A DNA stretch of 64,000 nucleotides from Octopus sinensis (Eukaryota), in assembly GCF_006345805.1 (NCBI RefSeq), contig NC_043014.1:45198001-45262000 (forward strand), in the 5' to 3' direction. The stretch's first letter is position 1. The number at the start of each line of letters is the position of its first letter. Made by a program: the position numbers and the translations under genes. Shown one piece after another: positions 3,231-44,642 of this stretch. The notes beneath the pieces were generated by a model, which saw only the letters and a list, made by a program, of their open reading frames with translations, was not told the origin of the DNA and did not search any database.

Positions 3231-6200
3231 CTTGCAATCACTGATTTGTAATAGCTTAAACAGAATGTTAACATTATCTCACCAATCATAACGGACTTGC
3301 AAAGGCCATGGATACTGCTTTCTTCCTTCAGAACTAGCAACTTAAAGCAAAAAAACCTAACCCTGGTGAAATTTGAACTATGGTTATATAAAAACAACAC
3401 TAAATGTTGAAAGTTATTCAGTCAAAAGCTCTGCCATTTCTATTCACCTAACACTCTAAATTCTATATAACAATGCCATTTTAAGAACATTATCCCTCTC
3501 ACTCAGTACAAACAAACTCAAAAACATATAGACAAAAACAGGAAGAACATAAAACCTAAATAGAACTCAATTGCAGTATATCTTGAATACCAGAACAGAG
3601 GAATGAACCTTATCGTTTAACTTACTGCCTATGTACCATAAGGCTCCTCAATCAATGCTAGTTGGGTTGCACAACAACATATCACTCTCAGTTGTAATAA
3701 TATTAATATCAAAAGAAAACATATAAAAATGTTCATCAGTAAAGAGAATTCACAAGAACCATTAACTGTTAATACACAAACCCAATTATTTAATTGCAGC
3801 TGTTATGCTACAATATATAACACACAAGAAGTACATACATAGAGAGAAAGAGAGTTTTTACAAAGACTATCATTTTACTACAGACACTCTGATTTGTAAT
3901 AGTTGCAATGTAATCACACACAAACGCATACATCAGCCATTAAATTATTTATTTTAAAGTGAATTCAAGATTTTCTAGATAACAGTATAAGAAAATTTCA
4001 GGTATCATCAACTAATTGCTAAGTTTAAAATTTACAAAAATATATGTTATGCATTTCTTAGAAACTTTAGCGAAATCAATATATGTTTCACTACACACTA
4101 GGTATGTAATATTAAACAATGATAAAACCACAATAAAGTGATGTTTTTTGTACTAAGTGTAGAATATGTAAAAAGAAAATGGTTCAGTCACTAAAATAAA
4201 CAGTAAGACAATTACACTGAATTTCTTTCTAGAAAACTAAGTATGAAATACGATAATAAAAATACAGCTAGATTAGACCTTGACAACATATGGAAAGAAT
4301 CTCAGGTGGACATAAATAAAAGGAAAGATTCTAAGTAAATCAGAAAAGAGAATCGACTCAACTCTTGTTCAGAAGCCTAGATTTTAGAGCATGTATTAAA
4401 CAATCATGATGAATACAGTTGTTCAAACATCTTTCTAGATCAGGAGTGAGGAGACTCTGCCCACAGGTACAATTGTGCCCACAAGCCTATTTTATTCTGC
4501 CTGCAGGCTGATATACTCATATGTACAAAATATAGTAAATTTTTCAATCATAAAATTTATACAATATTTTCATGCCTATTTGCGACATAGGTCACATTTC
4601 CACTACAACTTAAAACGGTTAGACTCAAACAGAAAATCATCCAGTAATTGTCATTTGAATGGAAATTTTGTTTTCACTATAAAACACATATTACTAGGCT
4701 TGTACCACCCCCTTGAGACCCAATTACACTCAAGCTGAAAAATGTAGGATAAATCATAAGTAATATAAATGTCTTAAATTCAGTGGTAGTATTAATGAAG
4801 ATGTTATGCATTAATTTAGTGTGTTAAACTTATCTTTATTAATGTATATCGAATTATACATAGGTATATACAAGATCATCATCATCGTTTAATGTCCGTT
4901 TTCCATGCACTACACAGATATAAGAGTTAGAACTTGTGATTCACCCACGGACCTTATTCTTTGGAAATTTTTGCTCACTGCACTAAAAAGTTATCCCAGC
5001 CCTGTTCTAGATCAATAGTTCCAAAACTCTTTAGCTATGATTTCGTTGCTTTCATGAATTTCCCCAATTCCTCCTACACACTATATTAAAAACAATATTT
5101 ATTATAAAATTGTTTATGAACATATTGAATATAATGACACAAAACTATTCCAAGTTCCATAAATCTCATAGTCCTTGTGGTAGATAGATAGCTGTGCTCA
5201 ATTTGAGGAACCCCTAAACTAGGTGATGATGTCTGACAATGAATGCATATGAAATTCAAAATCACATTAATTTTTCAACTAAAATTTTTGAATCATCAAC
5301 GGAACATTTTACAATTTTAAGTTTGAATTTGTTGAAGCTTAACTTAACCCAAACACAGAATCTCAGATTGGTAAACTATTCCATTGCCAAAGCATTTGAA
5401 TAAGCACCACCACCACCCACCTCCCCATAAAAGATTAACCTTAGTGCTGTTCAACGACAACAGCAAAATGTAATTCATATGTGACTGTGATACATTAAAG
5501 ATTTTCTGAACAAGAATAAGAAATTTGGAAGTATTTACAAATTAATCATATAAGTTAACAAACTAAGCTTCGTAGGAAACAATGTTTTTAAATCTCAAAC
5601 TAAACATGAAATATGATAACAAAAAGTACAGCTACATTAGACCTTGACAACATCCTCTTAAATAATCTACAATGTATTCATTTCCTTCATAATATCAATG
5701 ATAGCTGATGTAGAGACTATAATTTATTTAACAGGAATATGAAATCATTTTTATTTCAAAGTTTTATCAGATTAAAATTTTTAAATGTACAAGACCTTAT
5801 TTTGGTTCTAAAAGAAAAGTTTATTTATCTATATGTAATTAAAAATAAATATCTTGCCCTAGTTTTGATTTGAAAGAATGAAGGCTACTGCAGGCTGAAA
5901 TGAAGAAGAAAGGAAGAGAATGTGATATAACTGGAAATTAAAACACGAATATATTTTATATTACAACTACAAAATTGTTTAGTTTCAAACTAAAAGCAAA
6001 GAAAACATCTTTGGTACTATATATTATTTACTATTTTATATCACAATGACTATTATGTAATGGTATCACATTAGTATACAAGATATTAGTATACCAAGCA
6101 GGATACAATTATTTGTTTAAAGGTACAGCTAGCTGCCTTTGTCTCCTCATAACAAAATGTAACTAGATTTCAGATTCTTTTCTTCTTACAGATGTGTTGT

Positions 6201-9152
6201 GCTGTAAATATTTATAACTAAAAACAACTGGTGCTCATTTTTGAAACATGGTATATAAGATTAGTATAATCTATGATATTTATATGCAACATATTCTGTT
6301 AAATATGTAAAGGATTTGAAGTTAAGTAAAGAATATATTTCTGTTTTCATATGGCTTCCTACAAGAAAATCTTTTGAAAGTTAGTAGCTAAAGCTTGGAT
6401 AGTGTAAGCATTTCAGAGCGATAGAGAAGGATAAAGTAAAATATTTAGTATAACGTATAGAAGGATAGCATAAAGTGGTGGCAAAAGAAGGATGATAGGT
6501 TTCACCAGAGTTGGTAACCAACCATTAAGTTGAGAGAAGCAGAAACCATTGCATTGCTAGAAAAAGAAACTGATCAAAGACAAAGCTCAAAATGAGCCAG
6601 TATCGCTGAGTGATATTTTAACAATCAATTATGCAGACTTTTTATACAAGCTATCAAGTATTTGGGTCAATGATGAATTTTCCATCCTAAATATGTCAGC
6701 CCTTTGTTGAGTAAAAAAGGAATATTTAGATATTTTACTCATGCTAAAGAATTGTAATCCATTTTATTATAAAAAAATAATAATAAATATATAGGTCATT
6801 TCCTAACTTATGCTAATAGCTACTGTATAAACCCTTTTTATATGAGGGCTTCGGTGCACAATTTCATCTGTTTAGGATATAAATAGTAAAATATTTATTT
6901 AAGATAAACTGAGGTAATTTAGCAAAACTACACACTTCTTTACTTTGAAGCCAATTATAGAAATAATAATTCTGCCTCTTTAACAAAAGTATATGATATA
7001 TCTGACCAATTCTACCATTCGACACACATTGAAACCAATACCACATCTAAAAAAGGGATGAAACATCTCAAATAATATCAAATTAAAATGTGAAGATGCT
7101 TTAGATAGATCGTGTGTCACAGTCTAGTAGTTATTTAGAGCAAAACATTTATTCAACTAAATTCACACAGAAGCCTATCAAAACACACAAACGAAGGTAA
7201 CATATGGTCTGGGGCTATAAATTTCAGTAAAAAAATAATATATATATCTACATGCTAAGGTGCAAAATCTAGTACTAACAGACTGGCTTTGTAGGATAGC
7301 TTCATATTAGTGCTGATTGGTATCAGAAAAGAATAAATTCAGAAGGAATGTGTTTTCATCTCTGGATATGACACTTTTAGGAGAACATTTTGCTGAAGTT
7401 CCCATAAAAAACTTTATGTATGCACTATTTATTTACTAAATTTAGAAATGTGAGAGCATCAGCTACATTGTTGATTTCCCAACATTTTTAAACATTTTCT
7501 TCATGATACATCATTTCCAGATCTCTCTCTCTCTCTAGCATTACTTTGAAAGAGAGGGTCTCAAAACACTATTTAAAAAATGATCTTACAAGAACTTGTT
7601 AAACCCAAAGCTTAACTTAACTCACTGTTTATCCTCAAAGGAGCTTTTTCAAACATAGTGCCCGCTTAAGCCATCTCAAAATCCTTTGTAACTACACTTA
7701 AATATAAACCAAGAGAGAGCCTCCACATGGTCAATCAACTTGCTAAAAATAGTAGCAGCCAAATCTGCCTTAAAATTACGCCATATAAGGAGAAGCCACA
7801 TCAGAAAATGTAATTCTATATATTCCTAAAAAGACAGCATGGTAATGGCTGAAATGCCTTTGACAACAGGTCTACTTAAGGGTCAACTGAGTCTTAACAA
7901 CATCAAAATAGACAGACGCTTTCCATCAAATTTAATCTCAATGCAAATTTGCACATCACACAGTATTTCTACCATCCTTTTATGCACCTCTATATTACTA
8001 ATTCTTCTTTTATTCATTCAAGATTAAAAATGAATCTAAAGAACTCTGTCATAAAGCTATCAAGTCTCTCTGATGCTCCATTAATAAGCCATCGCCTAAA
8101 TTAAGTGTAATTTAGAATCAAAGTTCACAGAGTGCATTCTTTCTTAATCTTGTAAAAAGAAAATCAGAGATCAATCAGGTTTTCTATAATTTCCCCACAC
8201 CAGTTCTTGCAGGAATTTTAGTCATCAATAGATGTTCGGAAAGCAATATGAAAGAAAAAAGGTGGTGTAAATGAAAATGAATGAAGTTAAGTAATTAACA
8301 AATAACATGTTAGTAGAAAAATTAGTTAAAAATTGGGAAAATCAGGACGTGTTAAAAGAAATAATCTGAAGGAAACTAAACTAGATTACAATATTTAAAC
8401 ATCTGATCTTATGATTTTGTTTGGAGTTAGACCTATTTATTCCAAGATTCCCAACAATTAAAACACTAAAGCCGTTGATATGATTGAAAGAAATTCAAAC
8501 ACCCATTAGGACCAGGAACATATTTCCATACTTAGTTCTGGTTACATGACATGAAGGGATGAGAGATGAATTTTTCTTTCAATAGGACATCGATCTATTA
8601 AAAATAACAGTCCCAGATGATCAGATACCTATTCCTGAAATGAAATGAAATATCAGTATTCTACACAGAAACCCAAGAAAAGGAATGTACCTGATTTGAA
8701 ATCGTGACCTATTGGTATGTGGCCTAATACATTATCCATTTAGCCATCTGCCTCTTCGTGGCAATGACCTTATTTAATCATGTTTAACTTTTTTGACTAT
8801 TTACCACTCAACTTCTCAGGCTACCATTCAAATAGGTAGGTAGTTTACAACTGGATATATTTTGTTGATTCTAAGCACTCCACCACAAAGGACTGGAACA
8901 CACACATATTTTCAGCAAGACAAACTGAGGCAAGAAAAGAAACTTGTTATGTACAAGACTATAATCCAACAGTTGCAGGTAGGTTACAACAATATTTCAA
9001 CACATGATGCTAGTTTATATTCCTCATGAATAATTCCTTGGTAGTAAATAAAGGTTTAATACAGTTTCAGCTTTGCAACAACAAATATAATTTTTAATGG
9101 AGATCATTTGTAGACCAAGAAAGATGTTCCTTTAACAGTGAATGTTTACATA

Positions 9153-9544
9153 GGCGCAGGAGTGGCTGTGTGGTAAGTAGCTTGTTTACCAACCACATGG
9201 TTCCGGGTTCAGTCCCACTGCGTGGCACCTTGGGCAAGAGTCTTCTACTATAGCCTCTGGCCGACCAAAGCCTTGTGAGTGGATTTGGTAGACGGAAACT
9301 GTATATATATGTATATATATGTGTGTGTGTGTTTGTGTTTGTCCCCCTAGCATTGCTTGACAACTGATGCTGGTGTGTTTATGTCCCCGTTACCTAGCGG
9401 TTCAGCAAAAGAGACCGATAGAATAAGTACTGGCCTTACAAAAGAATAAGTCCCGGAATCGAGTTGCTCGATTAAAGGCGGTGCTCCAGCATGGCCGCAG
9501 TCAAATGACTGAAACAAGTAAAAGAGTAAAAGAGAGTAAGAGTA
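9153..9544 (+). mobile_element. Full-length tRNA-derived SINE (family A, octopus-type)
   Basis: A-box-like gtggctgtgtgg, B-box-like ggttcagtccc, internal (TA)/(TG) microsatellite, 3' GAGTAAAA tail; near-identical copies at 30185 and 54639. Confidence 0.9.
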
Positions 9545-9834
9545 TGCGGTAACAAAGTAGGTCGAGACAAGTGATGACCACTTGTCTGATTGGGATGATT
9601 CTGGCTCCACAGGAGATGAACTCAGTATTGTAAGCTTATAAATCATTTGATAATTTTGAAAGGATGCTTGCAGCCATCAGTTGTTCATAACATGGGCTAC
9701 CACTTTACAGCTAGGAGGACTGGGTTATAAGAGTCAGGTGTCATTGTTACAAGCAAACTTACATGAACGACAATATATGATGCTGACTGTGCCCCTACTT
9801 CTCTGTGTATGTGTGTGTGCATAAGTGTATATAT

Positions 9835-10330
9835 ATCACCATCATCATTTTACATCCACTTGCCATACTGGCATGGGTTGGACCATTTGAAAGAATCTGA
9901 CAGGTTGAAAGTCCAAGTCTTGCTTGCTTCAGCATTTCAGTCTGGACTTGTTTTCTAGAGTTGGATGTCCTTCCTAGCACCAACCAGTACACATTACAAA
10001 GTGCAGATTGTGCATCTTTTCAAGGCACCAGCACTGTAGTGTCTTGCTGTAGACAAAATTGCATTTTTCTTTACATGATTCACCAATTCTTACAAGAAGG
10101 GGAAGACTGACCAACATATAACATCATTCTCCTTTTAACATCTATTTATGCATGAGATGAGACTTAGTAGAGAATTTTCTATGGTCAAATGCCCTTCTTG
10201 ACACCAAACCTCACCTGTTTTCAAGCAAGGTAATAATTTCCCCTGTCTATTAAACAATAGGCACCTTGAACATGCTTTCACAAAAGACTGCATGCAAACA
10301 ATACTGCTTGTATGAATGGTGGTATTGCCC
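9835..10330 (-). mobile_element. Two decayed RTE 3'-tail fragments
   Basis: catcatcattttacatcc...ggatgtccttcct and catcattctccttttaacatc...atgcccttcttgacaccaaacctcacctgttttcaagcaaggtaat, the reverse of the tail at 991. Confidence 0.6.
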
Positions 10331-10959
10331 CAGCATGGCCACAGTCCAATGAGTGAAACAACAGGTAATATATATATATATATATATATATAAGGGACAG
10401 ACAGACATATAGAAAGACACTTTTTACTATTTTTACTATTACCATTAACTCATCAAATATAATAGTAATTTCAAACTTCTAAAATGGTTGATTTTTTTTG
10501 ATGAAGCATAAAGCTCATTCTTAAGGGACCATATAAATTAATATATCTCAATACATTATCGACACCAGTTTAATCAACTTCTAAATGTTAACATCAACTC
10601 AGTTAAGACATATATCTAATGAGTGGTTCTGCCAGACTAATTACAGTAAATCACTTAATCTCATGTCATCACTATCATTTTTACCCTAGAAATAGATATT
10701 ATATAAGTTAACTCAGTCAACACTGAACCCTACAGACAGATACAATCTGGTGTTTATATCACTTGAGATTGAATGACATATCAATTATCTTTCTTGAAGA
10801 ATTTAACCTTTAAAAGTTAACATCTATGCAAGTGACATGGATACTAAGTACAATAAATGGGTCATGACTACTGCAACCAATTACACTTCACAATCGGTTT
10901 AAAAGAAACTAGAAACAAGCCGGCGAAGGAGTCTCTCTCTATCTACCTGGCAGAGATAG

Positions 10960-11650
10960 AAGCCAAGTCTGCCTCACTTGATCATCTAAAAAATTAATTC
11001 ATTTAAAAATTATACATTATACATAAAAAAAAGGCGGGGATTAAATAAGATGAGTTGATCAGACTTGGAATGCTTTCCATCATATTCAACATAGTAGAGA
11101 TAGCAGCCAAATCTCCCTCACCTGACCATCAAAAACAAAAATTAATTCATTTAAAAATGAAACACAAAGACGAAATAAGTTGAGCTGGTCAAAGCAGGAA
11201 TCCTTTCGATCATAAATCTCCTTGAATGGGCTGACATCAAGTTAAACAACAACAGAAAGTAACACATTGCATAATGTAGTCTTAGATATACTATGGCAAA
11301 AATTAAAGGATAATTGTTGCCACAACACCATTAATCAAAGGTCGGCAGGATCAGATTAACCTGGGATTAAACAACAGATAACCGGAATGGTTCACATCTA
11401 AGTTATACACTTACAGTTACATGTATATGCAAACAGTAAGGGAACCTCCATGCGCACTCACAACCTGCTAATAATAGCAGCCAAATGTATGCCTCAATTC
11501 ATATACCCTAATGTCTTAAATAAATGAAATTTTAAAAATAATTAAAAAAATAAATAGGACACATACAAAAAGGAGATGATGGTGATGATGGCTAGAATGT
11601 CTGCTTATTAGTCTGCTGATCAGGATTGACCTGGAGTTAATAAACAACAA
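10960..11650. repeat. Cluster of partial copies of a dispersed repeat (family D, SINE/LINE-tail-like)
   Basis: Motifs atagcagccaaatctccctca and gattgacctggagttaaacaacaaca recur about three times here; related pieces at 7710-7850, 39255-39320, 57300-57360 and reversed at 52015-52090. Confidence 0.6.
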
Positions 11651-11767
11651 CAGTTAATACAAAATACAGAGAGAATAAGGAAGAGATTCACAGAGGATAT
11701 AAATGCAATGAAAAGAAAGAGAAAGGAACAAGGATCGGTTTCAAATACTTTTCAGATTTTATTATAT

Positions 11768-11775
<8 letters not shown>

Positions 11776-11809
<34 letters not shown>

Positions 11810-12380
11810 TTTTTTTTAAATTGAATTCTAATTTTGTTTTCTGAATTCATATTGAAAATTTATGACTTGAATAAATTTCATTTATTATTATTATTTTTTT
11901 TTTTTTTAATTTAAACAGGATGTCGTTGATCAATTAATCTTTCAATTTCGGTACAAGACAAATCATTTTTAAAAGTAATGCTCTAGAAACGAGTTTATAC
12001 ATTTTGATGATTCTTTTTTTTTTTTTTTCCAAGTTTTCAATTAAGACTGAAATGGTTTCATAAAAACCACCTTATTTAATAGCAAAATGGAGTTGAAAAA
12101 AAATATATAAAGCAAGTAAGCAAAAGTGAGATTTTTAAGGGAAAGGAGTATAAATAGCAGCACAAGCTAAATTCAAGCAACAAAAGATGACAAAAAAAAA
12201 TATTGATGATAATGGTAGTAGTAGTAGATGATGATGATGACGATGACTATGATGATGATGATAGTGGTAGAGGAACAGATGACAACCATAATATGGAGGC
12301 TGATGGTAGTGGTAGCAGTAGTGATAAAGATTCACCATGACTGGTCATGGTGAGTCTTTTGAAGTATTGACAAAATCATA

Positions 12381-12416
<36 letters not shown>

Positions 12417-12787
12417 GTGGTGGTGATGATAGCAGTGGTAGAGGTGGTGGTGGTGATGTGTTGTTGGGGTGGGAGGTCAGCAATCTTGTTAGTGGCAGAG
12501 ACAAATGTGATGTTATTTGTTAGTGATATTTTGATTTTTTTTTTGTTTTTTTTTTTCTATTTTTTTAGGGTGCTGAAGAACTAATAATCTCAGTTCCCAT
12601 AAATCTTGATGAGGAAGAGGAAGAGAAGGAACATAAGTAGTGATGATAAAGCTGTCAATGTTGCTTGGGCTTTGACTTGAGGAACTGGTTCAAGAGGAGG
12701 AGGCAGGAGATATGGAGATTGGAGGGAGTTATGATTTCAGTAATCTTGCTAATCACAGTAGTAGTAGTGGTAGTGGTAGTGGTGGTG

Positions 12788-12847
<60 letters not shown>

Positions 12848-13560
12848 TCGATGATGGTGGTGGTGGCGACGATGGTGGTGTTTGAAAAGAAATGAAAATG
12901 ATGTCAAGGGAAACAATGACAATGATACCAAGCAAAGGTGACAGCAGCGGAAAGCTAGCATGCTGCTACTGATGCTTACAATAATTTTTATAATTAATGT
13001 AGTGCAATGTCATACAATTTTCAATTCCCCTCACCGCTCCGAGCACCTTTATTTTATTTTATCTTTTAATGACAACATCGGTAACATGACAGGAAGTGAA
13101 GGGAAAAGCTTGTAAAGAAGTATTGGTAATAGGATGAATCATATCCAGACTAATGTCAACATAAACAAACAGCAGCATGAAGGTGTAAGATTTTTACAAT
13201 TAAGAGCCTGAACTTAACATTTTGAAGAGGAATTCAAAACATTGCAAGCAACTGCTAAAATAATAAAAGGTCTATGCAATGATAAAATACTGTTTATTTC
13301 ATACACAACCTATTTTAGAGATTTCTGCTAAAAGTGGTACCATAAATTTACTGATGGCTTTGATTTAATTCTCAAATCTTTTCAAATCCATGTTCAAATG
13401 GCAAAAATCCATTGATAAATTTCTAAAAATATAATTTTTTTTTTCCTTTTTTTGCTTTTTACTCTTTCAACTGTTTTGTGACAAGTGTTCATGTAACTAT
13501 GATGAATGTGTATGCAAAGGTATGTGAGTATATATAGAGAGAGAGTGTGTGTGTGTATAT

Positions 13561-13600
<40 letters not shown>

Positions 13601-14611
13601 CTTTTTTTTAAATTGAATTCTAATTTTGTTTTCTGAATTCATATTGAAAATTTATGACTTGAATAAATTTCATTTATTATTATTATTTTTTTTTTTTTAA
13701 TTTAAACAGGATGTCGTTGATCAATTAATCTTTCAATTTCGGTACAAGACAAATCATTTTTAAAAGTAATGCTCTAGAAACGAGTTTATACATTTTGATG
13801 ATTCTTTTTTTTTTTTTTCCAAGTTTTCAATTAAGACTGAAATGGTTTCATAAAAACCACCTTATTTAATAGCAAAATGGAGTTGAAAAAAAATATATAA
13901 AGCAAGTAAGCAAAAGTGAGATTTTTAAGGGAAAGGAGTATAAATAGCAGCACAAGCTAAATTCAAGCAACAAAAGATGACAAAAAAAAATATTGATGAT
14001 AATGGTAGTAGTAGTAGTAGTAGTAGATGATGATGATGACGATGACTATGATGATGATGATAGTGGTAGAGGAACAGATGACAACCATAATATGGAGGCT
14101 GATGGTAGTGGTAGCAGTAGTGATAAAGATTCACCATGACTGGTCATGGTGAGTCTTTTGAAGTATTGACAAAATCATAATGATGATGATGATGATGATG
14201 ATGATGGTGGTGGTGATGATAGCAGTGGTAGAGGTGGTGGTGGTGGTGGTGGTGATGTGTTGTTGGGGTGGGAGGTCAGCAATCTTGTTAGTGGCAGAGA
14301 CAAATGTGATGTTATTTGTTAGTGAGATTTTGATTTTTTTTTTTGTTCTTTTTTTCTATTTTTTTTTAGGGTGCTGAAGAACTAATAATCTCAGTTCCCA
14401 TAAATCTTGATGAGGAAGAGGAAGAGAAGGAACATAAGTAGTGATGATAAAGCTGTCAATGTTGCTTGGGCTTTGACTTGAGGAACTGGTTCAAGAAGAG
14501 GAGGCAGGAGATATGGAGATTGGAGGGAGTTATGATTTCAGTAATCTTGCTAATCACAGTAGTAGTAGTGGTAGTGGTAGTGGTGGTGGTGGTGGTGGTA
14601 GTAGTAGTAGC

Positions 14612-14645
<34 letters not shown>

Positions 14646-15344
14646 TCGATGGTGGTGATGGTGGTGGTGGCGACGATGGTGGTGTTTGAAAAGAAATGAA
14701 AATGATGTCAAGGGAAACAATGACAATGATACCAAGCAAAGGTGACAGCAGCGGAAAGCTAGCATGCTGCTACTGATGCTTACAATAATTTTTATAATTA
14801 ATGTAGTGCAATGTCATACAATTTTCAATTCCCCTCACCGCTCCGAGCACCTTTATTTTATTTTATCTTTTAATGACAACATCGGTAACATGACAGGAAG
14901 TGAAGGGAAAAGCTTGTAAAGAAGTATTGGTAATAGGATGAATCATATCCAGACTAATGTCAACATAAACAAACAGCAGCATGAAGGTGTAATATTTTTA
15001 CAATTAAGAGCCTGAACTTAACATTTTGAAGAGGAATTCAAAACATTGCAAGCAACTGCTAAAATAATAAAAGGTCTATGCAATGATAAAATACTGTTTA
15101 TTTCATACACAACCTATTTTAGAGATTTCTGCTAAAAGTGGTACCATAAATTTACTGATGGCTTTGATTTAATTCTCAAATCTTTTCAAATCCATGTTCA
15201 AATGGCAAAAATCCATTGATAAATTTCTAAAAATATAATTTTTTTTTCCTTTTTTTGCTTTTTACTCTTTCAACTGTTTTGTGACAAGTGTTCATGTAAC
15301 TATGATGAATGTGTATGCAAAGGTATGTGAGTATATATAGAGAG

Positions 15345-15387
<43 letters not shown>
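11776..15387. repeat. Tandem duplication of a ~1.79-kb unit (copies 11809-13556 and 13601-15357) bounded by (TA)n
   Basis: Directly visible, period 1792 at the left edge; the copies differ by about 5 substitutions and several microsatellite lengths. Confidence 0.97.
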
Positions 15388-15389
<2 letters not shown>

Positions 15390-18050
15390 GTGTGTTTGAT
15401 AAAAAATACCTATAATATCTTCTAACGAATGTATCAATCAGCATCTTTAGTATGAGCCTTGATTAGCTCGATTGAATTGATATCAAAAGATATATTTGCT
15501 TTGAATTAAAAGAAATTGGACACATGAAAAAAATATGATGAAAAAAATGTATGTATCACACATTAACTGTAAATGGAAACACACACTTTTATGAGCATAT
15601 TATCAAATTGAAAAAATAATATCTGAAATCAGTTGACAACATTTAATTAAGACAATAAAAAAATATAAATAAAGAGCTGAACTTTAATTATGTCTCTTTA
15701 AAAGTTTTAATTTAAGCTTGAAAATTTTCAATGTACATATTTTTGTTCGCTTTAAAAAAAAAAAAGGAAAAAAACGGAAAAACTTGATAAAATCAGTTTT
15801 TAGTATGTAGACTGAAATTTTAGCAAAAAAAAAATAATAAAGAAAATCAATAAGCTCTGAGGTTATGCTATTCTTATTAAGGAATTCTAGCTGAGCAAAA
15901 GTCATGTTCCCTCTATAATATCACTAAAATATATATTTATCTTGTGTTTTAAACTTACAGAAAAAAAAAACTAATTTAACAAAAGAAGGAATCTTTAAAA
16001 AATATCAGCTAATATATATGTAAAGTTTCTTGTTTTTTGTTGCGCAAACTAAATAATAAGTTCTTAATAATTCCATGATATTTATTATTGCAATAAACAG
16101 TGATTCAAATGTAGTATTCTTTGAAATGGTATCAATATCTTATAGATAGAAGAATAAAAATGAAGATCTGTATGAGTTGGTAATATTTGCCAATCTTGTT
16201 AATGCATAGATAAGTGGGCACCATTTTCATGTTAAAAATATACAAATGGGTATATTTACCAGTATATTATACAGGTATCAATTTTGTAAACGGTACTTTC
16301 TGTTGATGTTATTTGACAAAATGACCAGCCCCGTTTCTTGATTTTATAGTGACATACATTTGTCATTGACAACTGGAAACATTTTTATTGGGCTTGAAAA
16401 CGGTAAGGAAATGGATGAAATGCTCAAATATTACAGGTAAGGTTGAAATCATTTCACTTTCATCATTCACCAGCATGCTACCAACAAGACAATGAGGACT
16501 ATGAGTATACCAAGAGTATATCAAGAGGCTCACATCTACACAAGAATTTATATAGATTATCTGAGACTGCAGTTTAAATGAACTAATAAAGAGTATGTAC
16601 AAATGATGAGAATTGCCCAAATTAGAAACAATTTATATAAATTTTAAAACAATTTTTTTTGTTTTGTTTTATTACAAGGACAGTTTTGTTTAGTTTTTTG
16701 AATGATCTGCAAAGACCAAAAGATGCAAAGTAATTGTGTCTTAGATAAAATATGCTACAAATATAAACCAATATGGTTGTAGGTGAAGATCAATTTCTGT
16801 CGGCTTCAAATTTACAGTACATACTTAAACTAACCAGCAAATTTATAGTATGTACTTCAAATTGACAGCACACACTTAAACGGTCAGAGAATAATTACTA
16901 TATAAAGGAAAAATGTTAGAAAAAGCAGTTTAGAAAGATCTAAAAATAAGAAAGTTATTTGAAAACTAATCAAATTTTAGTCTTCCAATAATTGATTTTA
17001 CAATATAAATTGAGCTTGTCATTTTAATTTCGGATAAAAATGTTTTTACCATTTAGGAAATGAATTATCAAACGAGCTTTTTGAAAGAAGGTGTGTATTT
17101 TAGGCTACATAAACAACGAAATCTAGCATAAACAATTAAAACTGTAAAATCGTAAGTAAATATTATAATATGCAATTGAAAATTAAAAATCTAAAAACAA
17201 AATAATTCAAAACAAGAAATTAAATTCTGCTGGAAATGCAAGTTAGAATCTAAATCTAAAAAACAAAGCAGCAAAAGAATTTGAATAAAAATTGAAAGTT
17301 AATTTTATTTTTAAATAATACTCTGCAGAAAATGTTTGTAATATGATGTAAAATTTTCCCCCATGTACAGGTATGGAAAACATTAAAAATAGTTCAATAA
17401 AAATCTAAAAGTTAACATAGTCAAGAGCTCTTACTTTATTTACCCCAACCCTCTCTTTTTAAGTAGATGATTGTGTTCAAGTTGGTGGCATGCTTTAGCC
17501 CACAAGTAGGAAAGGGCCAAATGTTTAGAACAATTCCGAGCATGGACAATGGACTTCTCTGCAGGGTGTCACCAAATATAATGCATCACACACAATTTTA
17601 CAAGTAAAAAAAATCATTATTTCTCTTTTGAGAAAATAACATTTAAAGTTGATGTCTATTGATTATGATAGATAATGTGAAGAATAATTGTCACATACAA
17701 AATACTATAATCTTTTTAATAGAAAATACTTAGAACCAAGATTGTTAGCAATAATTTTGCTAACATCTATTCCAAATGTCCTGCATGTGTGTTCTTCAGT
17801 TTGCATACTTAGATGCACGTTTATCTTCAAACTGTATGGTTCGTAATTTTACGTAAAGAATTCTAGAAGTTTGAGAGTCTTAAAGATCCCCTGCAGCAAG
17901 TCCCAATAATAGAATCCAGTGGCAAGGAGTTTGCATGCGAACATTCAGGCTAATGGTAGTAGTAGTAGAAATGTATGTCTGTCGTAGAAAGCTTTTGAGG
18001 AGGGATAACTCCAAATATAGGACACACCAAAATACAAAGCAGTTAAACAA

Positions 18051-20567
18051 CTACAGCATACCTTCCTCTGTTTGAACTTGGTTTTCTCCATTAGGAAGTG
18101 ACTGTACATCCTGTGAATGACTTATCACATTGGACTCATTGTCCATATCTGCAGACACAGAACTGCTATTTTCAGTTGGAATTGTGGATTTCTGTACAGG
18201 TAATTCCTCCATTGCAACAGTTGGTTGCTGAGAAATTTCAGAATTATCTTTAACTACAATAGATTCTTTGTCATCATCAGCAACAGGCACTTGTTCAACA
18301 GAACCAGAAATGTCTATCTGCTCAGCGCTGCTTGGACCATTTTCTGTAGATTTATCATTTTCAGTATTTGCTACCTCATTTTCAGCTGTTACCTCCTCAG
18401 TGTGACTGTCACCCTTTCCAGGTGCATTATCAATATCTTGTTCTGAGACTGCTTCTGATGTAATTTCACCTGCTGGTGTTAATTCTGTTGCTATCGTCTC
18501 TGCTGCTTCTTTTACTTGTTCAGCTTCATCAGCTGATGCTTTCTCTTCCACTACATCACTGCTATTATCCTCATTTGTTTTGGCTTCTGATGGTGTTAAA
18601 GCTGCCCCTTCTTCTGTATGTACAGACTGAGCAGATTCTTCTACAGCTGGTTGTTTTGTTTCCTCTTCTGATGGAATTTCCTCAACAGTTTCTTGGGGTT
18701 CTAAATGTTCTTCAGCTACAGATTCATGAGGTTCTTCAATAACAGCCTCTTTGAGTTCCTCAACCACAGCCTCTCCAGCCTCAGCCACTTGAGATTCTTC
18801 GACTGCAATTTTTTGCTGTTCTACAGCTTCGTGTTGCTTTTGCTCAAATTCCTGCTGAACTTCTTCCAATACTGCTTCTACTAAGCTCTCTTCATAAGGT
18901 TTTTTAACAGGTTCTTCAACAATAGCAGTTTTCTCTTCAATATCCACTAAAACTGGGCTTTCTGTTGATTGTACCTCTTCAACTACAGATTTAACAGCAC
19001 TAGCTGCTTCTTCTGTTGGTAGTATTAAGTCCTCTTCATAGGCACCTTTAGGAGAGGGTAATGCTGAAGGTACTTCAGCTGTCATCAAGTCAGTTGACAA
19101 AATATTGTTAGATTCAGTATGTTCACTCTTGAAAATCTCTTCAGTTTTCTCTTCATCTTCCACAACTGGTGGTGGAGGAGGAGGTAAGCTATCTTCTACT
19201 TGATGAGCAGCCTCTTCAATTTCTTGCTTCACAGTATCTACAACGGTGTCTACACTGGTCTCGGTGATGGCTTCAACAATGTTTCCACTGTCAACACTAG
19301 TTTCCTGGAGTTCAACCTTAGGCATAACCAGTGCATCTACACTAGTTTCAGTAGCATCAGGTTCAACAATTTTACCACTATCTACACTAGTCTCGGCAAC
19401 ATCAATATCCAGGGGAACAGCTGGAATATCAACAGGTTCTTCTTTAGAAACTTTATCTTCAACAAGTTCTTTAACATCACTACTATCAACATTAGATGTT
19501 AATACAGTAGATGATTCAGATTCTTTACTAGTGGGAAGAAATTTATCAATTAAAGAGGAGGGCATTTTCTCAGAAACAGCTGAAATAACAGTTGATACTT
19601 TCTCTTCAACAACAGGAACAACCACTTCTTCAACTTTATCAGCAACTTTAGTCACACCTTCTTTTACTTTTTCTGTAGCAAAGCTTACAATACCGGCATC
19701 TTTTGAATCACTTTCAACCTTTTTCACTTCAGTAACTGTTTCTGAAACGGTAGTGATAATTGGCTCAGATTTAATTACTTTGCTGGACTCCTTGGTGAAA
19801 TGTTGAACCTCAGTAACCACATCCTCTTTTGCAGGAACTGAGTCAATTGCTGAGCCGACTGAGTCTGAAAATTTACTAACAGACGAAACTACAGTTTTAT
19901 ATTCTTGAGTGGAGCTACTGGTAATTTTGCTCACTGATTCAGTTGCACTGGTAGTATGTTTGGTTACTGATTCTGATACATTGTTACTAAGAGTCTTCAC
20001 AGATTCATTAGTACCAGACACAACTTTACTAACTTGCTCAGAAGCACTGCTTGTAATTTTGCTCACTTCTTTTGTGACCATAGTCTTACATTCCTCAGTA
20101 ACAGATTTCACAACTTCAGATGCAACCTCCATTGCAGTTGCTTTAATATCTTCTGCAACATCTTTCTTGTCAACCATAACAAAATCTTCCTCTTTCTTTT
20201 CCAAAGTAGACTTAACTTCTTTAGTCACATCTGAGACAGTTGAAGCAGCTTCAGCTGTAGCAGATGCTACTTCATCTTTCTTTTCCTCAACCGCAGCTTC
20301 AACTTTAGCAGCTTCTGCACTCACAGCCTCTCCCACATCTGTCACATTTTTCAGTATGTCCAACTCTGTTTTATCTATTTGTATATCTGCGGTTCCTTCC
20401 TTGCTCACCTCAACACTAACCCCTTGGAGAAGTGGCTCTTGGGCATTTTCCCCAGAAGCTGCAGGACGTTCAAATAGCACATTTTCTTCATTTTTTTCAA
20501 CAGGCTTATCTACTAAATTTTCTTCTTCAGCCTCTTTTTTGGCTTGTTTACCCAAAGAACACCCCAT
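18051..20567 (-). CDS. Intronless 838-aa acidic low-complexity protein with MGC N-terminus (predicted myristoyl/palmitoyl), LIR motif, 11-mer repeats, polyproline tract and AKAP-like helices
   Basis: 2517-bp uninterrupted ORF in a genome where other ORFs are under 230 aa. Context aaacATGG, in-frame TGA 14 codons upstream, TAG stop. Composition is E/V/S/T/A/K-rich and not derived from a microsatellite. Confidence 0.9.
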   Translation of the reverse strand: MGCSLGKQAKKEAEEENLVDKPVEKNEENVLFERPAASGENAQEPLLQGVSVEVSKEGTADIQIDKTELDILKNVTDVGEAVSAEAAKVEAAVEEKKDEVASATAEAASTVSDVTKEVKSTLEKKEEDFVMVDKKDVAEDIKATAMEVASEVVKSVTEECKTMVTKEVSKITSSASEQVSKVVSGTNESVKTLSNNVSESVTKHTTSATESVSKITSSSTQEYKTVVSSVSKFSDSVGSAIDSVPAKEDVVTEVQHFTKESSKVIKSEPIITTVSETVTEVKKVESDSKDAGIVSFATEKVKEGVTKVADKVEEVVVPVVEEKVSTVISAVSEKMPSSLIDKFLPTSKESESSTVLTSNVDSSDVKELVEDKVSKEEPVDIPAVPLDIDVAETSVDSGKIVEPDATETSVDALVMPKVELQETSVDSGNIVEAITETSVDTVVDTVKQEIEEAAHQVEDSLPPPPPPVVEDEEKTEEIFKSEHTESNNILSTDLMTAEVPSALPSPKGAYEEDLILPTEEAASAVKSVVEEVQSTESPVLVDIEEKTAIVEEPVKKPYEESLVEAVLEEVQQEFEQKQHEAVEQQKIAVEESQVAEAGEAVVEELKEAVIEEPHESVAEEHLEPQETVEEIPSEEETKQPAVEESAQSVHTEEGAALTPSEAKTNEDNSSDVVEEKASADEAEQVKEAAETIATELTPAGEITSEAVSEQDIDNAPGKGDSHTEEVTAENEVANTENDKSTENGPSSAEQIDISGSVEQVPVADDDKESIVVKDNSEISQQPTVAMEELPVQKSTIPTENSSSVSADMDNESNVISHSQDVQSLPNGENQVQTEEGML

Positions 20568-21892
20568 GTTTCCTAGCTTACAGTAATTTCTATTTCTCAG
20601 AAAATCTCACAAAAATAAGTTTGTATTTAGCTTCACGTTCTCCTTTACTTTCTTAACTTCTTATTTTTCTTTCAAAGAAAAAAAACTTACAGATCAACAA
20701 ATAACTTTGAAGAAACAGAAATACTTCTATTTTTTTCCCTTTTGTTGTAAATTATTAAAGATATAGTGGACTTCGTTAAAGCATACTTAATTCAACAAAA
20801 CAACAGCAAATCATTCAAATTACAAAATCCAACAAAAATATGTATGCAAAGTCTTTCAAAGGAGGATATTTGTCATGGATAAAGCAAATATTTTCTCAAC
20901 TGAAATACTAAATCCAAATAAGGTACTCCAAGTGTTTAATGTTTCCAATATAATTCAAAAGTAGAAAATTCCAGGTTTCTTTTAGTTAGGTATTCAATCA
21001 AGAAAAAAAAAAGTTGTGTAAATCCACGTGAAAGCCACAATTATTGCAACTAATTAACAGAAGCTAAGTGAGGAAAACCAACTCACCAAAAAAAAGTTGT
21101 AGCAAGAATTCTTGAAATACAAATTGAAAATTTTTTTTTACACAATAATATAAAAAAAAGTATTTTTTTTTCCTCTCTTTTTAGCACGTGTGATAGTAAA
21201 AAATGGCTTATCCAGTACTGCAATTTCTTTTTCTAGTAAAGAATAAATCTCCAAAATGTAAATATGAAATAATCCGAGAGTGTAGAATGAAGAAATCAGT
21301 CCAAGTTGGTGTTATAAGGTGTGGGCTTTTTGCTTTCTTCAAGAGCCAGCACAAAACATATACTGCTATCTCCTCGACAATTATTACAGATAAAATACAA
21401 AGGTATATCCCAGCAGAAAAACTGTAATCTTTTTACCAGAATTTGATTTTCATGAAGTCTTAATTAATTGATTCCAGGATGCATTTCTAACATCACTGCT
21501 ACAAGACAAACCTTCTGTCAAATTAAGGAGTTCTGTGGTGTGCGCGCGGCTCTGATATGCAGTCTGTAAGCACAGACAAAACCAGGCAATGTAGCTGACT
21601 GCTCAGGAGGAAAGCAGAGGGCAGTAGTGGCTGGTTAGAAATCCTAGCTGCCACTCCTAACAATGTATGAAGATGGTAGCATAGAGAAAAGTGCTGAGAA
21701 GAGAGAAGATTCTTTTCCCATCAGTAAAAGTGAGTTGAGATTAACAGCTATCTAGTCTGAAGGCTAAACTACTACTGCTGTTGTGAAGGTAAAAGTTATG
21801 GTAGGTGTAGTAATGACAGAACTGGCAGTGTTGCGAGTAGTTCTTATAGTAGTGGCAACAGCTAATGCTGGCTACTGCTGCTCACTAAAACT

Positions 21893-25495: not shown

Positions 25496-25573
<78 letters not shown>

Positions 25574-25651
25574 TACATACATATCTATATATATATATAC
25601 ATATATATATATATACATATATATACATATACCTAAATATATACACACATA

Positions 25652-44601: not shown

Positions 44602-44642
44602 TCACACACAGGCACACAGACACACATGCACACTCACACACA

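What the first reader, a model, noticed from the sequence alone, without database searches (positions are those of the whole stretch)
18051..20567. Orphan-like lipid-anchored acidic disordered scaffold: an AKAP200/gravin/GAP-43-type architecture in a probable cephalopod
Seen: intronless 838 aa, N-terminus MGCSLGK, very E/V/S/T-rich, no W and few aromatics, no recognisable globular domain, and several short motifs in sequence (LIR, 11-mers, polyproline, amphipathic helices). Established: Gly2 can be myristoylated and Cys3 palmitoylated; Drosophila AKAP200 and vertebrate AKAP12 are myristoylated acidic disordered scaffolds, and BASP1 and GAP-43 are acylated acidic neuronal proteins. Inference: a membrane-tethered signalling or trafficking hub likely annotated only as uncharacterised. 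This is the best candidate for an undescribed system in the window.
Basis: partly seen in the sequence, partly recalled or inferred. Interest (0 to 1): 0.72.

Follow-up and report, generated by a model that had tools for sequence, protein, structure and literature searches.

The report
Giant lipid-anchor exon of octopus SPA17-like gene
The 838-codon reading frame is real but is not a stand-alone orphan gene: it is an octopus-specific, 40-fold enlarged version of a short "lipid-anchor" first exon that molluscs use as an alternative start for their SPA17-like calmodulin-binding (IQ-motif) gene, giving a membrane-tethered, GAP-43-like giant protein.

Summary
The ORF (18051-20567, minus strand) exists as described. 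It is not intronless. Codons 1-835 are the first coding exon of Octopus RefSeq models of 1031-1239 aa; "GML*" is read-through past a GAAG|GTATGC donor. The downstream exons lie outside the window (next intron over 18 kb). They encode the SPA17 post-docking-domain flank and 3-6 IQ motifs, one nearly identical to the GAP-43 IQ motif.

Relatives in molluscs, an annelid and cnidarians are SPA17-type proteins (RIIa docking domain plus IQ repeats). In molluscs the RIIa exon alternates with a short first exon that always starts with MG and usually fits the N-myristoylation pattern. I found two unannotated copies in bivalve introns. Only in Octopus has this exon grown from 20-60 to 835 codons.

The exon body has no detectable homologue outside Octopus. 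It contains:
- a proline-free 176-residue stretch of 11-residue repeats with the physicochemistry of synuclein/perilipin lipid-binding helices;
- four ETSVD repeats;
- a PPPPPP run;
- a 365-residue polyacidic tail.

Best reading: a dually acylated, membrane-tethered calmodulin-binding isoform. The GAP-43 analogy holds. The AKAP, "orphan gene" and "intronless" readings do not.

Verdict: new variant of a known kind, moderate interest.

The parts
18063..20567 (-). First coding exon, codons 1-835, of the Octopus SPA17-like multi-IQ gene. One further coding base follows at 18062.
   Evidence: 100% identical to aa 1-835 of O. sinensis XP_029647520/22/23/26. 96% identical to O. bimaculoides XP_014778084, with 31 substitutions and only in-frame indels of 1, 11, 3 and 6 aa.
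20535..20567 (-). Acylation motif and basic patch, MGCSLGKQAKK (Gly2, Cys3, K7, K10, K11).
   Evidence: Fits PROSITE PS00008, G-{EDRKHPFYW}-x(2)-[STAGCN]-{P}, applied by hand. MGC is the dual-acylation start of G-alpha-i/o and Src-family kinases (established knowledge). Equivalent first exons in other molluscs all start with MG followed by a basic cluster.
20292..20567 (-). aa 1-92, invariant between the window (identical to O. sinensis) and O. bimaculoides.
   Evidence: 0 substitutions in the first 92 aa, against about 4% over the rest of the exon. By my estimate about 3.4 substitutions were expected, so this is only a modest signal.
20172..20192 (-). LIR-like motif EEDFVMV (aa 126-132), in the only break between the two long predicted helices.
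   Evidence: Motif found. The motif count is not above chance.
19845..20372 (-). aa 66-241: 16 uninterrupted 11-residue repeats with no proline. Candidate 3-11 amphipathic helix, with Val/Ala/Ile at repeat positions 2, 5 and 9, Ser/Thr flanks, and Lys and Glu on the polar face.
   Evidence: Lag-11 autocorrelation z = 5.0 and hydrophobic periodicity at 95-100 degrees z about 5, both measured on aa 85-345. Register shown. Mean hydrophobic moment 0.33 against 0.13 +/- 0.03 in shuffles, reached by 0 of 2000. AlphaFold helices at 66-125 and 134-242.
19539..19826 (-). aa 248-343: a further helix-prone V/K/E/S-rich stretch, broken by prolines and with a weak register.
   Evidence: AlphaFold helices at 248-261, 271-285, 294-334 and 337-343. 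Hydrophobic moment only 0.13.
19248..19394 (-). Four ETSVD-centred repeats (aa 392-440), spaced 14-15 residues apart.
   Evidence: The lag-15/30 signal is weak, z 2.5-2.8.
19167..19184 (-). PPPPPP run (aa 462-467).
   Evidence: Identical in O. bimaculoides.
18063..19157 (-). aa 471-835: polyacidic E/V/A/Q/S-rich tail (net charge -79, 20 prolines) with isolated predicted helices at 519-534, 558-608 and 680-695.
   Evidence: Three of the four in-frame indels between the Octopus species (11, 3 and 6 aa) lie here.
18056..18065 (-). 5' splice site GAAG|GTATGC. The exon ends at 18062 and the intron starts at 18061, in phase 1.
   Evidence: Sequence. The RefSeq proteins continue TEE-E-TGHDP. The same phase-1 junction onto (G)+A[AG] ACT GG is seen in the oyster and freshwater mussel loci.
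18051..18062 (-). Read-through codons GML plus TAG. All but the first base (G, 18062, the last exon base) are intron sequence and not part of the spliced protein.
20607..20609 (-). In-frame TGA, 13 codons upstream of the ATG.
1..18050 (-). Start of the intron that follows the exon; it is over 18 kb long. None of the downstream exons of any isoform is in the window.
   Evidence: tblastn of P0001, P0123, P0125, P0126, P0003 and P0050 gave only low-complexity matches or none.

Best explanation
The ORF is the alternative first coding exon of the Octopus orthologue of SPA17 (Sp17).

Shown:
- The gene's downstream exons, which lie outside the window, encode the conserved SPA17 flank (TGHDP...DRQYN) and three to six IQ calmodulin-binding motifs of the Sp17/GAP-43/neurogranin/PCP4 type, depending on the isoform.
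- In molluscs this gene has two mutually exclusive first coding exons. One encodes the RIIa docking/dimerisation domain. The other is a short exon that begins with MG followed by a basic cluster.
- In the two bivalve loci examined, the MG exon lies inside intron 1, downstream of the RIIa exon.
- In Octopus the MG exon has expanded from 20-60 to 835 codons.

Inferred mechanism:
- Gly2 is myristoylated and Cys3 palmitoylated.
- The lipids, the K7/K10/K11 patch and a 176-residue 11-mer amphipathic helix hold the N-terminal part on a membrane or lipid surface.
- The polyanionic tail of about 365 residues acts as a long flexible spacer.
- The IQ array then holds calmodulin near the membrane and releases it, as GAP-43 does in vertebrates and as proposed for igloo in Drosophila.
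- Choosing the first exon, probably through an internal promoter, would switch the same calmodulin-binding module between docking onto AKAPs or axonemes (RIIa form) and lipid anchoring (MG form).
For: Exon identity:
- aa 1-835 are 100% identical to four O. sinensis RefSeq isoforms that continue into the ETGHDP and IQ exons.
- A consensus donor lies exactly at the point of divergence.
- Pfam IQ scores E 2.6e-29 with 5 copies in the 1185-aa isoform.

Family:
- The C-terminal 350 aa retrieve RIIa+IQ proteins from molluscs, an annelid and cnidarians.
- The Argonauta orthologue (66% identical) aligns end to end with the Sp17 chains 9fqr_Ic and 8j07_K, E 5e-26 and 5e-24.
- A profile of the shared region finds vertebrate Sp17 at E down to 5e-10.
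- SPA17 is a metazoan-wide R2D2 docking-domain protein (PMC8339350).

Alternative MG exon:
- Every full model that reaches the TGHDP junction without an RIIa exon starts with MG, apart from one Elysia model that starts MPRC (P0062), which I suspect is a mis-annotation. Examples are Haliotis (two species), Solemya, Ruditapes, Biomphalaria, Plakobranchus and Octopus.
- Unannotated copies with phase-1 donors lie in intron 1 of Crassostrea virginica (L002 13097-13196, E 0.001-0.005) and Sinanodonta woodiana (L005 23917-23980, E 0.004).

Anchor and helix:
- The N-terminus fits the PS00008 pattern.
- 11-residue periodicity has z = 5.
- The hydrophobic moment is 0.33, hydrophobic fraction 0.35, aromatic fraction 0.017 and charged fraction 0.31. 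Table 1 of PMC5889406 gives a moment of 0.30 for alpha-synuclein, 0.35 for Plin3 and 0.257 for Plin4.

GAP-43-type IQ: matches to the neuromodulin IQ (E 3e-4), neurogranin IQ (4e-3), Sp17 (3e-5) and the PCP4 acidic-IQ unit (9e-5).

Coding constraint: only in-frame indels and 96% identity between Octopus species.
Against: - No transcript data could be examined, so the splice junction, the transcription start and tissue expression rest on RefSeq models whose support I could not see.
- No acylation predictor or experiment was available. The motif is necessary but not sufficient.
- The basic patch is weak: three Lys followed by four Glu within aa 12-16.
- The 11-mer region is net negative (-10 over aa 66-241, -1 over aa 134-241). 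Reversing the Plin4 helix charge to -1 per 33-mer abolished its lipid-droplet binding (PMC5889406).
- An Octopus RIIa exon was not seen. It is not in the 43 kb upstream or the 18 kb downstream of the exon, so the exon switch in Octopus itself is inferred from Argonauta and other molluscs.
- The Biomphalaria exon (MGAAVL) fails position 5 of the myristoylation pattern.
- Calmodulin binding is inferred from motif similarity only.
Confidence: 0.62

Rival explanations
1. One reading: a stand-alone, intronless 838-aa acylated acidic scaffold. Transcripts would end in the intron by intron retention or intronic polyadenylation, giving ...EEGML* with no IQ module.
For: The O. bimaculoides RefSeq model XP_014778084 (859 aa) ends ...EEGML, and the gene call on record for the window's source contig is also 838 aa. 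The read-through adds only three codons before the stop. AATAAA occurs about 610 nt downstream.
Against: Four O. sinensis isoforms splice out at the consensus donor. The 2015 O. bimaculoides model may simply be an ORF extension in an assembly where the next exon, over 18 kb away, was out of reach. That reason is my inference. The short equivalent exons of other molluscs (20-60 aa) make no sense without the downstream exons. At most this would be a minor extra isoform.
Confidence: 0.08
2. An AKAP-like anchoring protein, as for AKAP200 or AKAP12. One of the short amphipathic helices in the acidic half (aa 521-532, 559-570 or 685-696) would bind RII or R2D2 docking domains, possibly those of the gene's own RIIa isoform.
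For: Four matches to the Hundsrucker-type RII-binding pattern. The three in the acidic half coincide with isolated AlphaFold helices at 519-534, 558-608 and 680-695. N-myristoylated acidic AKAPs exist (established knowledge).
Against: Four matches against 2.7 +/- 1.8 expected from composition; 29% of shuffles reach four. There is no AKAP Pfam domain. No binding test was possible.
Confidence: 0.08
3. A cassette exon rather than a first exon. The RIIa exon, which is phase 1, would splice into the weak acceptor ctag|ga aac ATG five bases upstream of the ATG. MGC would then be internal and never acylated.
For: The frame works. One base from a phase-1 exon plus 'ga' makes a codon, followed by AAC ATG GGG in frame.
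Against: The acceptor has a purine-rich tract (gaaattactgtaagctag). The better acceptor, ttttctgag| at 20596, is out of frame and runs into TAG. All RefSeq isoforms start at MGC. In Haliotis the RIIa and MG exons are mutually exclusive. MG would not be conserved across mollusc classes if it were internal.
Confidence: 0.05
4. Largely neutral expansion. Only the MG anchor matters, and the other roughly 800 residues are a tolerated low-complexity insertion acting as an entropic spacer with no specific partners.
For: The exon body has no homologue outside Octopus. Indels occur in the acidic tail between close species. Other lineages also lengthen this exon with S/T-rich and acidic sequence, to 54 aa in Plakobranchus and 60 aa in Biomphalaria. 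LIR and AKAP motif counts are at chance.
Against: A 176-residue proline-free stretch keeps one 11-residue register, a moment no shuffle out of 2000 reached. The first 92 aa are invariant. The frame stays open over 835 codons in a genome where frames average 15 codons.
Confidence: 0.2

Closest known systems
SPA17 / Sp17 (sperm autoantigenic protein 17; R2D2 docking-domain protein of cilia and flagella)
   Same: It is the same gene family. The downstream exons carry the conserved flank after the docking domain (T-G/N-H/F-D-P ... DR-F/Y-YNN) and Sp17-type IQ motifs. The Argonauta orthologue aligns over the full length of the Sp17 chains from axoneme structures. PMC8339350 describes SPA17 as conserved across metazoa.
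   Different: This isoform lacks the RIIa domain and starts instead with an acylation motif and 835 residues of new sequence. It has 3-6 IQ motifs (5 in the 1185-aa isoform), against the single IQ matched in the ~150-aa vertebrate Sp17 chains. I found no report of a lipid-anchored SPA17 isoform.
GAP-43 / neuromodulin and the calpacitins (neurogranin, PCP4/PEP-19, Drosophila igloo)
   Same: It has an N-terminal lipid-anchor motif encoded by a separate first exon, an acidic unfolded body, and an IQ motif 16/19 identical to that of GAP-43. The last IQ unit, EIDIDLNDPEVEAAALKIQSGFRGYKKKK, resembles the acidic-IQ unit of PCP4. Igloo is cited as the invertebrate GAP-43-like gene (PMC9618489, PMC6917273). 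That igloo has a myristoylation signal is from my memory, not tested here.
   Different: No homology outside the IQ motif and no Neuromodulin Pfam domain. It would be myristoyl plus palmitoyl, rather than the two palmitoyl cysteines of GAP-43. It is four to five times longer, has several IQ motifs, and belongs by descent to the SPA17 gene.
11-mer-repeat lipid-binding amphipathic helices (alpha-synuclein, perilipins 1-5, exchangeable apolipoproteins)
   Same: It shows 11-residue periodicity, a narrow Val/Ala/Thr hydrophobic face, almost no aromatic residues and no prolines over 176 residues. Its hydrophobic moment and composition fall within the range in Table 1 of PMC5889406.
   Different: No sequence homology to the Perilipin, Synuclein or Apolipoprotein Pfam families. 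It is net negative rather than net positive. Lipid binding is untested.
BASP1 / MARCKS / AKAP200-type myristoylated acidic proteins
   Same: It combines myristoyl-Gly with a basic cluster and an acidic unfolded chain. The Haliotis, Solemya and Plakobranchus exons (MGGKL[ST]RL...NK.R) resemble the BASP1 start MGGKLSKKKK; the BASP1 sequence is from memory.
   Different: No BASP1, MARCKS or AKAP domain was detected. RII-binding helix matches are at chance. The functional module here is an IQ array.

Membership tests
SPA17 / Sp17 family | N-terminal RIIa (R2D2) docking/dimerisation domain, PF02197 | tested here: not met
   Absent from the exon, from all four MGC-starting isoforms and from the whole window. 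It is present in the Argonauta orthologue and in most mollusc isoforms of the same gene. The gene is therefore a member, while this isoform lacks the domain.
SPA17 / Sp17 family | Conserved flank after the docking domain (TxxDP...DRFYNN; C-terminal strand of the extended D/D domain, SPA17 aa 53-75) | tested here: met
   ETGHDPVTTSAALTDRQYNTD follows the exon directly in the RefSeq proteins. It aligns with the mollusc orthologues, and a profile of this region finds vertebrate Sp17 at E 5e-10. It is encoded outside the window.
SPA17 / Sp17 family | C-terminal IQ calmodulin-binding motif | tested here: met
   PF00612 E 2.6e-29, 5 copies. The IQ2 motif matches Sp17 chain 9fqr_Ic at E 2.9e-5. It is encoded outside the window.
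GAP-43 / calpacitin family | GAP-43-type IQ motif (AATKIQASFRGHITRKKLK) | tested here: met
   AATKIQAGIRGHLTRKKIK against 4e53 neuromodulin IQ, E 3.1e-4; against 4e50 neurogranin IQ, E 4.3e-3; against PCP4 2n77, E 8.8e-5.
GAP-43 / calpacitin family | Homology outside the IQ motif (Neuromodulin / Neuromodulin_N Pfam families) | tested here: not met
   No such Pfam hit for the exon or the full protein, even at E up to 1-10.
GAP-43 / calpacitin family | N-terminal fatty acylation that tethers the protein to the membrane | not testable with these tools
   MGCSLGK fits PS00008 and the MGC dual-acylation start, as judged by hand. No predictor or experiment was available.
AKAP (AKAP200 / AKAP12-gravin) | Amphipathic RII-binding helix | tested here: inconclusive
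   Four pattern matches against 2.7 +/- 1.8 in 2000 shuffles, so not above chance. Binding was not testable.
AKAP (AKAP200 / AKAP12-gravin) | Family-specific domains or sequence homology | tested here: not met
   No Pfam hit. No homologue other than Octopus among 1.84 billion representatives.
11-mer-repeat lipid-binding helices (synuclein / perilipin / apolipoprotein) | 11-residue (3-11 helix) periodicity with a segregated hydrophobic face over tens of residues | tested here: met
   Lag-11 z = 5.0 and hydrophobic periodicity at 95-100 degrees z about 5. Sixteen repeats in one register. Hydrophobic moment 0.33 against 0.13 in shuffles.
11-mer-repeat lipid-binding helices (synuclein / perilipin / apolipoprotein) | Sequence membership in the Perilipin, Synuclein or Apolipoprotein families | tested here: not met
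   None reported by hmmscan at E up to 10.
11-mer-repeat lipid-binding helices (synuclein / perilipin / apolipoprotein) | Folding on and binding to lipid surfaces | not testable with these tools
   Needs liposome or lipid-droplet binding assays and circular dichroism.

The most novel reading that the evidence does not exclude
Molluscs, and possibly their ancestors, run the SPA17 gene from two first exons. The same calmodulin-binding IQ array is thereby either docked to AKAPs and axonemes (RIIa exon) or lipid-anchored (MG exon). Octopus has turned the lipid-anchor exon into a lineage-specific 835-residue module: dual acylation, a 176-residue synuclein/perilipin-like amphipathic helix and a polyanionic spacer. 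The result would be a giant cephalopod 'calpacitin'. If the MG isoform is neuronal, it would be the molluscan functional counterpart of GAP-43 and igloo, and would suggest that such proteins arose from the lipid-anchored isoform of an SPA17-like gene.
Probability: 0.2. Interest if true: 0.68.

Novelty: new variant of a known kind. Interest (0 to 1): 0.42.

Why it matters
- It replaces RefSeq names that do not reflect the family ('golgin subfamily B member 1', 'IgA1 protease autotransporter') with a family assignment: SPA17-like, multi-IQ.
- It shows that the apparent orphan gene is one exon of that gene.
- It brings out an apparently undescribed regulatory design. An alternative first exon swaps an AKAP/axoneme docking domain for a lipid anchor on a calmodulin-binding array, across three mollusc classes. 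Two of the copies are missing from current annotation.
- The Octopus expansion is a clean case of exon-level birth of new protein sequence, from 20-60 to 835 codons, which includes a long 11-mer amphipathic helix.
- It gives a testable link between ciliary Sp17 proteins and the membrane-anchored GAP-43/igloo type of calmodulin reservoir, in an animal group studied for its nervous system.

Tried and rejected
- Pfam on the exon gave only sub-threshold low-complexity hits, DUF6277 and Baculo_PEP_C.
- An exhaustive HMMER search of the exon against 1.84 billion representatives found only the O. bimaculoides orthologue.
- The word-indexed search found only the two Octopus clusters.
- The single-sequence AlphaFold model was too poor (pLDDT 41.5) to justify a fold search.
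- The RIIa exon and all downstream exons were sought in the window by tblastn and by six-frame motif scans, and none was found.
- DNA for the Argonauta locus could not be obtained, because the gene spans 270 kb. The O. sinensis isoforms and Haliotis isoform X2 are not on record in the contig index. I therefore could not test whether other cephalopods have the large exon.
- The profile search with MG-type N-termini returned mostly short fragments and unrelated Drosophila IQ proteins. Its only new items were Plakobranchus and the vertebrate Sp17 hits.
- In the annelid Owenia only pattern-level MG-exon candidates were found, with no sequence similarity. Nematostella had none.
- AKAP-helix and LIR motif counts are at chance.
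- The larger ORFs elsewhere in the window have no Pfam hit. There are no Rfam families or tRNAs.
- Literature searches for the protein names and for a myristoylated SPA17 isoform found nothing relevant. The igloo paper is not held.


Full report

Yes, with one correction. An ATG-to-TAG frame of 838 codons lies at 18051-20567 on the minus strand and begins MGCSLGK.
- It cannot be a chance frame. Stop-to-stop frames in this AT-rich window average 15 codons, and the longest apart from this one (851 codons stop to stop) is 225.
- Its 2-kb bin has the highest GC of the window (0.39) and a strong strand-specific A excess.
- No Pfam domain reaches threshold.
- A single-sequence AlphaFold model is not globular, with mean pLDDT 41.5 and pTM 0.22.
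- An in-frame TGA lies 13 codons upstream of the ATG, which sits in GGAAACATGG.

The two large plus-strand ORFs over the same interval (19246-19806 and 19909-20586) overlap the exon on the opposite strand and had no separate support; I take them to be by-products of the coding strand's composition.

**2. It is an exon, not an intronless gene.**

- The frame is 100% identical over aa 1-835 to Octopus sinensis RefSeq proteins XP_029647520, 22, 23 and 26 (1239, 1185, 1140 and 1031 aa).
- At codon 835 these proteins diverge from the genomic frame. The genome reads GAG GAA G|GT ATG CTG TAG, a consensus AAG|GTATG donor in phase 1. The proteins continue ...TEE-E-TGHDPVTTSAALTDRQYN....
- None of the downstream exons of any isoform is in the window, so the next intron exceeds 18 kb. 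This fits the 270-kb span of the Argonauta orthologue.
- The window comes from assembly GCA_951406725.2, record OX597833.1. The gene call on record there, like the older O. bimaculoides model XP_014778084, stops at the read-through stop.

**3. What gene is it?**

- The downstream 350 aa carry five IQ motifs (PF00612, E 2.6e-29).
- They retrieve several hundred proteins. The best hits are from molluscs, the annelid Owenia and cnidarians, and have the architecture RIIa (PF02197) plus multiple IQ motifs.
- The closest, from Argonauta hians (66% identity), aligns over the full length of 'Sperm surface protein Sp17' chains from solved structures (9fqr_Ic at E 5e-26, 8j07_K at E 5e-24) and the SPA17 D/D crystal structure 7my4.
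- A profile of the shared region (TGHDP...DRFYNN plus the first IQ motifs) finds vertebrate Sp17 at E down to 5e-10.
- SPA17 is described as a prototype R2D2 docking-domain protein conserved across metazoa. Its extended D/D domain (aa 1-75) includes a conserved C-terminal flank (PMC8339350). From the Sp17 alignments, I take that flank to be the part encoded by the exon just after ours.

The gene is therefore the Octopus SPA17 orthologue with an expanded IQ array. The RefSeq names ('golgin subfamily B member 1', 'immunoglobulin A1 protease autotransporter') do not reflect this family; I take them to come from low-complexity similarity.

**4. The exon is the enlarged form of a conserved alternative first exon.**

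Among all full models that reach the TGHDP junction, those without the RIIa exon start with MG:

| Species | First exon |
|---|---|
| Haliotis rufescens and H. rubra | MGGKLSRLADIVNKRRKSD..TE |
| Solemya velum | MGGKLSRLRDTINKKRNAEE |
| Plakobranchus ocellatus | MGGKLTRLTESVNKTRRR... (54 aa) |
| Ruditapes philippinarum | MGNNFSLFQGCTSKKKNSGK... |
| Biomphalaria glabrata | MGAAVLCQKS... (60 aa) |
| Octopus | MGCSLGKQAKKEAEEE... (835 aa) |

The one exception is an Elysia model, which I suspect is a mis-annotation. In Haliotis the RIIa and MG exons are mutually exclusive isoforms of one gene.

I then looked in loci where only the RIIa isoform is annotated.
- In Crassostrea virginica (L002) the RIIa exon ends C|GTAAGT. 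The shared exon starts after TTGTAG|AG ACT GGC CAT GAT. Between them, 2.9 kb after the RIIa exon and 0.5 kb before the shared exon, lies AAAACC ATG G.. encoding MGTKFSRIREFVGKKRSSFHSIASCASSPMDAP, followed by G|GTAAAA in the required phase 1. It is the best tblastn match of the Haliotis and Solemya exons in the locus, at E 0.005 and 0.001.
- In Sinanodonta woodiana (L005) the equivalent exon MGNKLSIFRDCSSKESDKYTI plus G|GTAATT lies 1.5 kb upstream of the shared exon (E 0.004 with the Ruditapes exon).
- In Owenia only pattern-level candidates exist, and in Nematostella none.

The MG exon is therefore present in gastropods, bivalves and cephalopods. In the two bivalve loci examined it lies inside intron 1, downstream of the RIIa exon, which suggests an internal promoter. 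By the same layout, the Octopus RIIa exon should lie more than 43 kb upstream of the exon and beyond the window. It is not in the window.

All of these exons except Biomphalaria fit the PROSITE N-myristoylation pattern, and most carry a basic cluster. Octopus adds Cys3. MGC is the myristoyl-plus-palmitoyl start of G-alpha-i/o and Src-family kinases (established knowledge).

**5. Anatomy of the Octopus expansion.**

- The exon body has no detectable relative outside Octopus. An exhaustive HMMER pass over 1.84 billion representative proteins found only O. bimaculoides.
- Between the two species there are 31 substitutions and four indels, all in frame (1, 11, 3 and 6 aa). The first 92 residues are invariant.
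- aa 66-241 keep a single 11-residue register for 16 repeats with no proline. An example is SEQVSKVVSGT / NESVKTLSNNV / SESVTKHTTSA / TESVSKITSSS.
  - Lag-11 autocorrelation has z = 5.0. Hydrophobicity is periodic at 95-100 degrees per residue, z about 5, which is the 3-11 helix.
  - The mean hydrophobic moment per 33-mer is 0.33, against 0.13 +/- 0.03 in shuffles (0 of 2000 reach it). The hydrophobic fraction is 0.35, aromatic 0.017 and charged 0.31.
  - Table 1 of PMC5889406 gives moments of 0.30 for alpha-synuclein, 0.35 for Plin3 and 0.257 for Plin4, with similar fractions.
  - AlphaFold places helices at 66-125 and 134-242. The single break falls on EEDFVMVD.
- There follow a weaker helix-prone stretch (248-343), four ETSVD repeats (392-440), PPPPPP (462-467) and a 365-residue tail with net charge -79. 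The tail has isolated predicted helices at 519-534, 558-608 and 680-695.

**6. How it most likely works.**

Shown:
- the exon structure;
- the family assignment;
- the alternative MG and RIIa first exons;
- the motif-level fit to acylation;
- the 11-mer amphipathic periodicity;
- GAP-43-type IQ motifs. IQ2, AATKIQAGIRGHLTRKKIK, matches the neuromodulin IQ in 4e53 at E 3e-4 and the neurogranin IQ at 4e-3. The last unit, EIDIDLNDPEVEAAALKIQSGFRGYKKKK, matches the PCP4 acidic-IQ unit at 9e-5.

Inferred:
- Gly2 myristoylation and Cys3 palmitoylation tether the protein.
- The long weak amphipathic helix lies on the same lipid surface, with the anchor supplying avidity.
- The polyanionic tail projects the IQ array away from the surface.
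- The IQ array binds calmodulin, as the calpacitins GAP-43, neurogranin, PCP4 and igloo do (PMC9618489).
- First-exon choice redirects one calmodulin-binding module from AKAP or axoneme docking to a membrane.

Which membrane and which tissue are unknown. Neuronal membranes, synaptic vesicles and ciliary membrane are all possible.

**7. Rivals.**

- A truncated stand-alone 838-aa product is possible only as a minor intron-retaining isoform.
- The AKAP reading rests on pattern matches that composition alone explains (4 against 2.7 +/- 1.8).
- A cassette-exon reading is frame-compatible through the weak ctag acceptor at 20573. It is contradicted by all gene models and by the conservation of the initiating MG.
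- Neutral expansion of a tolerated spacer remains the main alternative for everything beyond the anchor. The unbroken 176-residue register and the invariant N-terminal 92 residues argue against it for the first third of the exon.

**8. Comparison and novelty.**

By descent the gene is an SPA17 family member. This isoform lacks the defining RIIa domain but keeps the flank and the IQ motifs. By design it works like GAP-43 or igloo, without being homologous outside the IQ motif. It also contains a synuclein/perilipin-like helix with no homology to those families.

I found no literature on this protein or on a lipid-anchored SPA17 isoform. I rate it a new variant of a known kind. The exon switch across molluscs and the Octopus-specific exon expansion are the new elements.

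**9. Limits.**

No transcript data and no cephalopod genome other than this window could be examined. Acylation, lipid binding and calmodulin binding are inferred from sequence.

Noticed in passing
L002 (Crassostrea virginica, CM130313.1) 13097-13196, + strand: An unannotated alternative first exon of the oyster SPA17-like gene. It encodes MGTKFSRIREFVGKKRSSFHSIASCASSPMDAP followed by a phase-1 donor G|GTAAAA. It lies in intron 1 between the RIIa exon (10001-10154) and the shared TGHDP exon (about 13740).
   Followed up: yes
L005 (Sinanodonta woodiana, CM100983.1) 23917-23980, + strand: A second unannotated MG-type first exon, MGNKLSIFRDCSSKESDKYTI plus G|GTAATT, 1.5 kb upstream of the shared exon. 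It resembles the Ruditapes exon (E 0.004).
   Followed up: yes
L003 (Owenia fusiformis) about 28993 and 15283, + strand: Intron 1 of the annelid SPA17-like gene holds MG-starting ORFs with phase-1 donors, for example MGNEVSRNQVSRAKNE... They have no sequence similarity to the mollusc exons, so whether annelids share the exon switch is open.
   Followed up: partly
window 11780-13571 and 13572-15374: A tandem duplication of about 1.8 kb (93-99% identical), inside the intron downstream of the exon. It contains low-complexity tracts that translate as runs of His and Tyr.
   Followed up: partly
window 49999-50471: Two copies of a 234-bp tandem repeat, 98% identical.
   Followed up: no
window 42249-42728 (+) and 48323-48949 (+): Two ORFs, of 159 and 208 aa, that by eye look like relics of a reverse transcriptase and of a transposase C-terminus. 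Pfam reports nothing at E up to 0.01, so they remain unidentified.
   Followed up: partly
window 19246-19806 (+) and 19909-20586 (+): Long open frames on the strand opposite the exon (186 and 225 aa, S/T/L-rich). I take them to be by-products of the coding strand's codon composition, not genes.
   Followed up: partly
downstream exons of the same gene (outside the window; P0001 aa 1127-1160): The last IQ unit with its acidic lead-in (EIDIDLNDPEVEAAALKIQSGFRGYKKKK) closely resembles the acidic-IQ unit of PCP4/PEP-19 (PDB 2n77, E 8.8e-5). The same DIDLNDPE-IQ unit is repeated many times in invertebrate SPA17-like proteins, which hints at a common origin for the calpacitin IQ units.
   Followed up: partly
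window 25518-25643, 44603-44715, 61491-61584: Simple (TA)n and (CA)n microsatellites.
   Followed up: no
Octopus isoforms P0001/P0123/P0126 (outside the window): A His-rich basic segment (ten consecutive His, then HKHMHQQH...) sits between IQ2 and IQ3. It is skipped in isoform X5. Its function is unknown.
   Followed up: no
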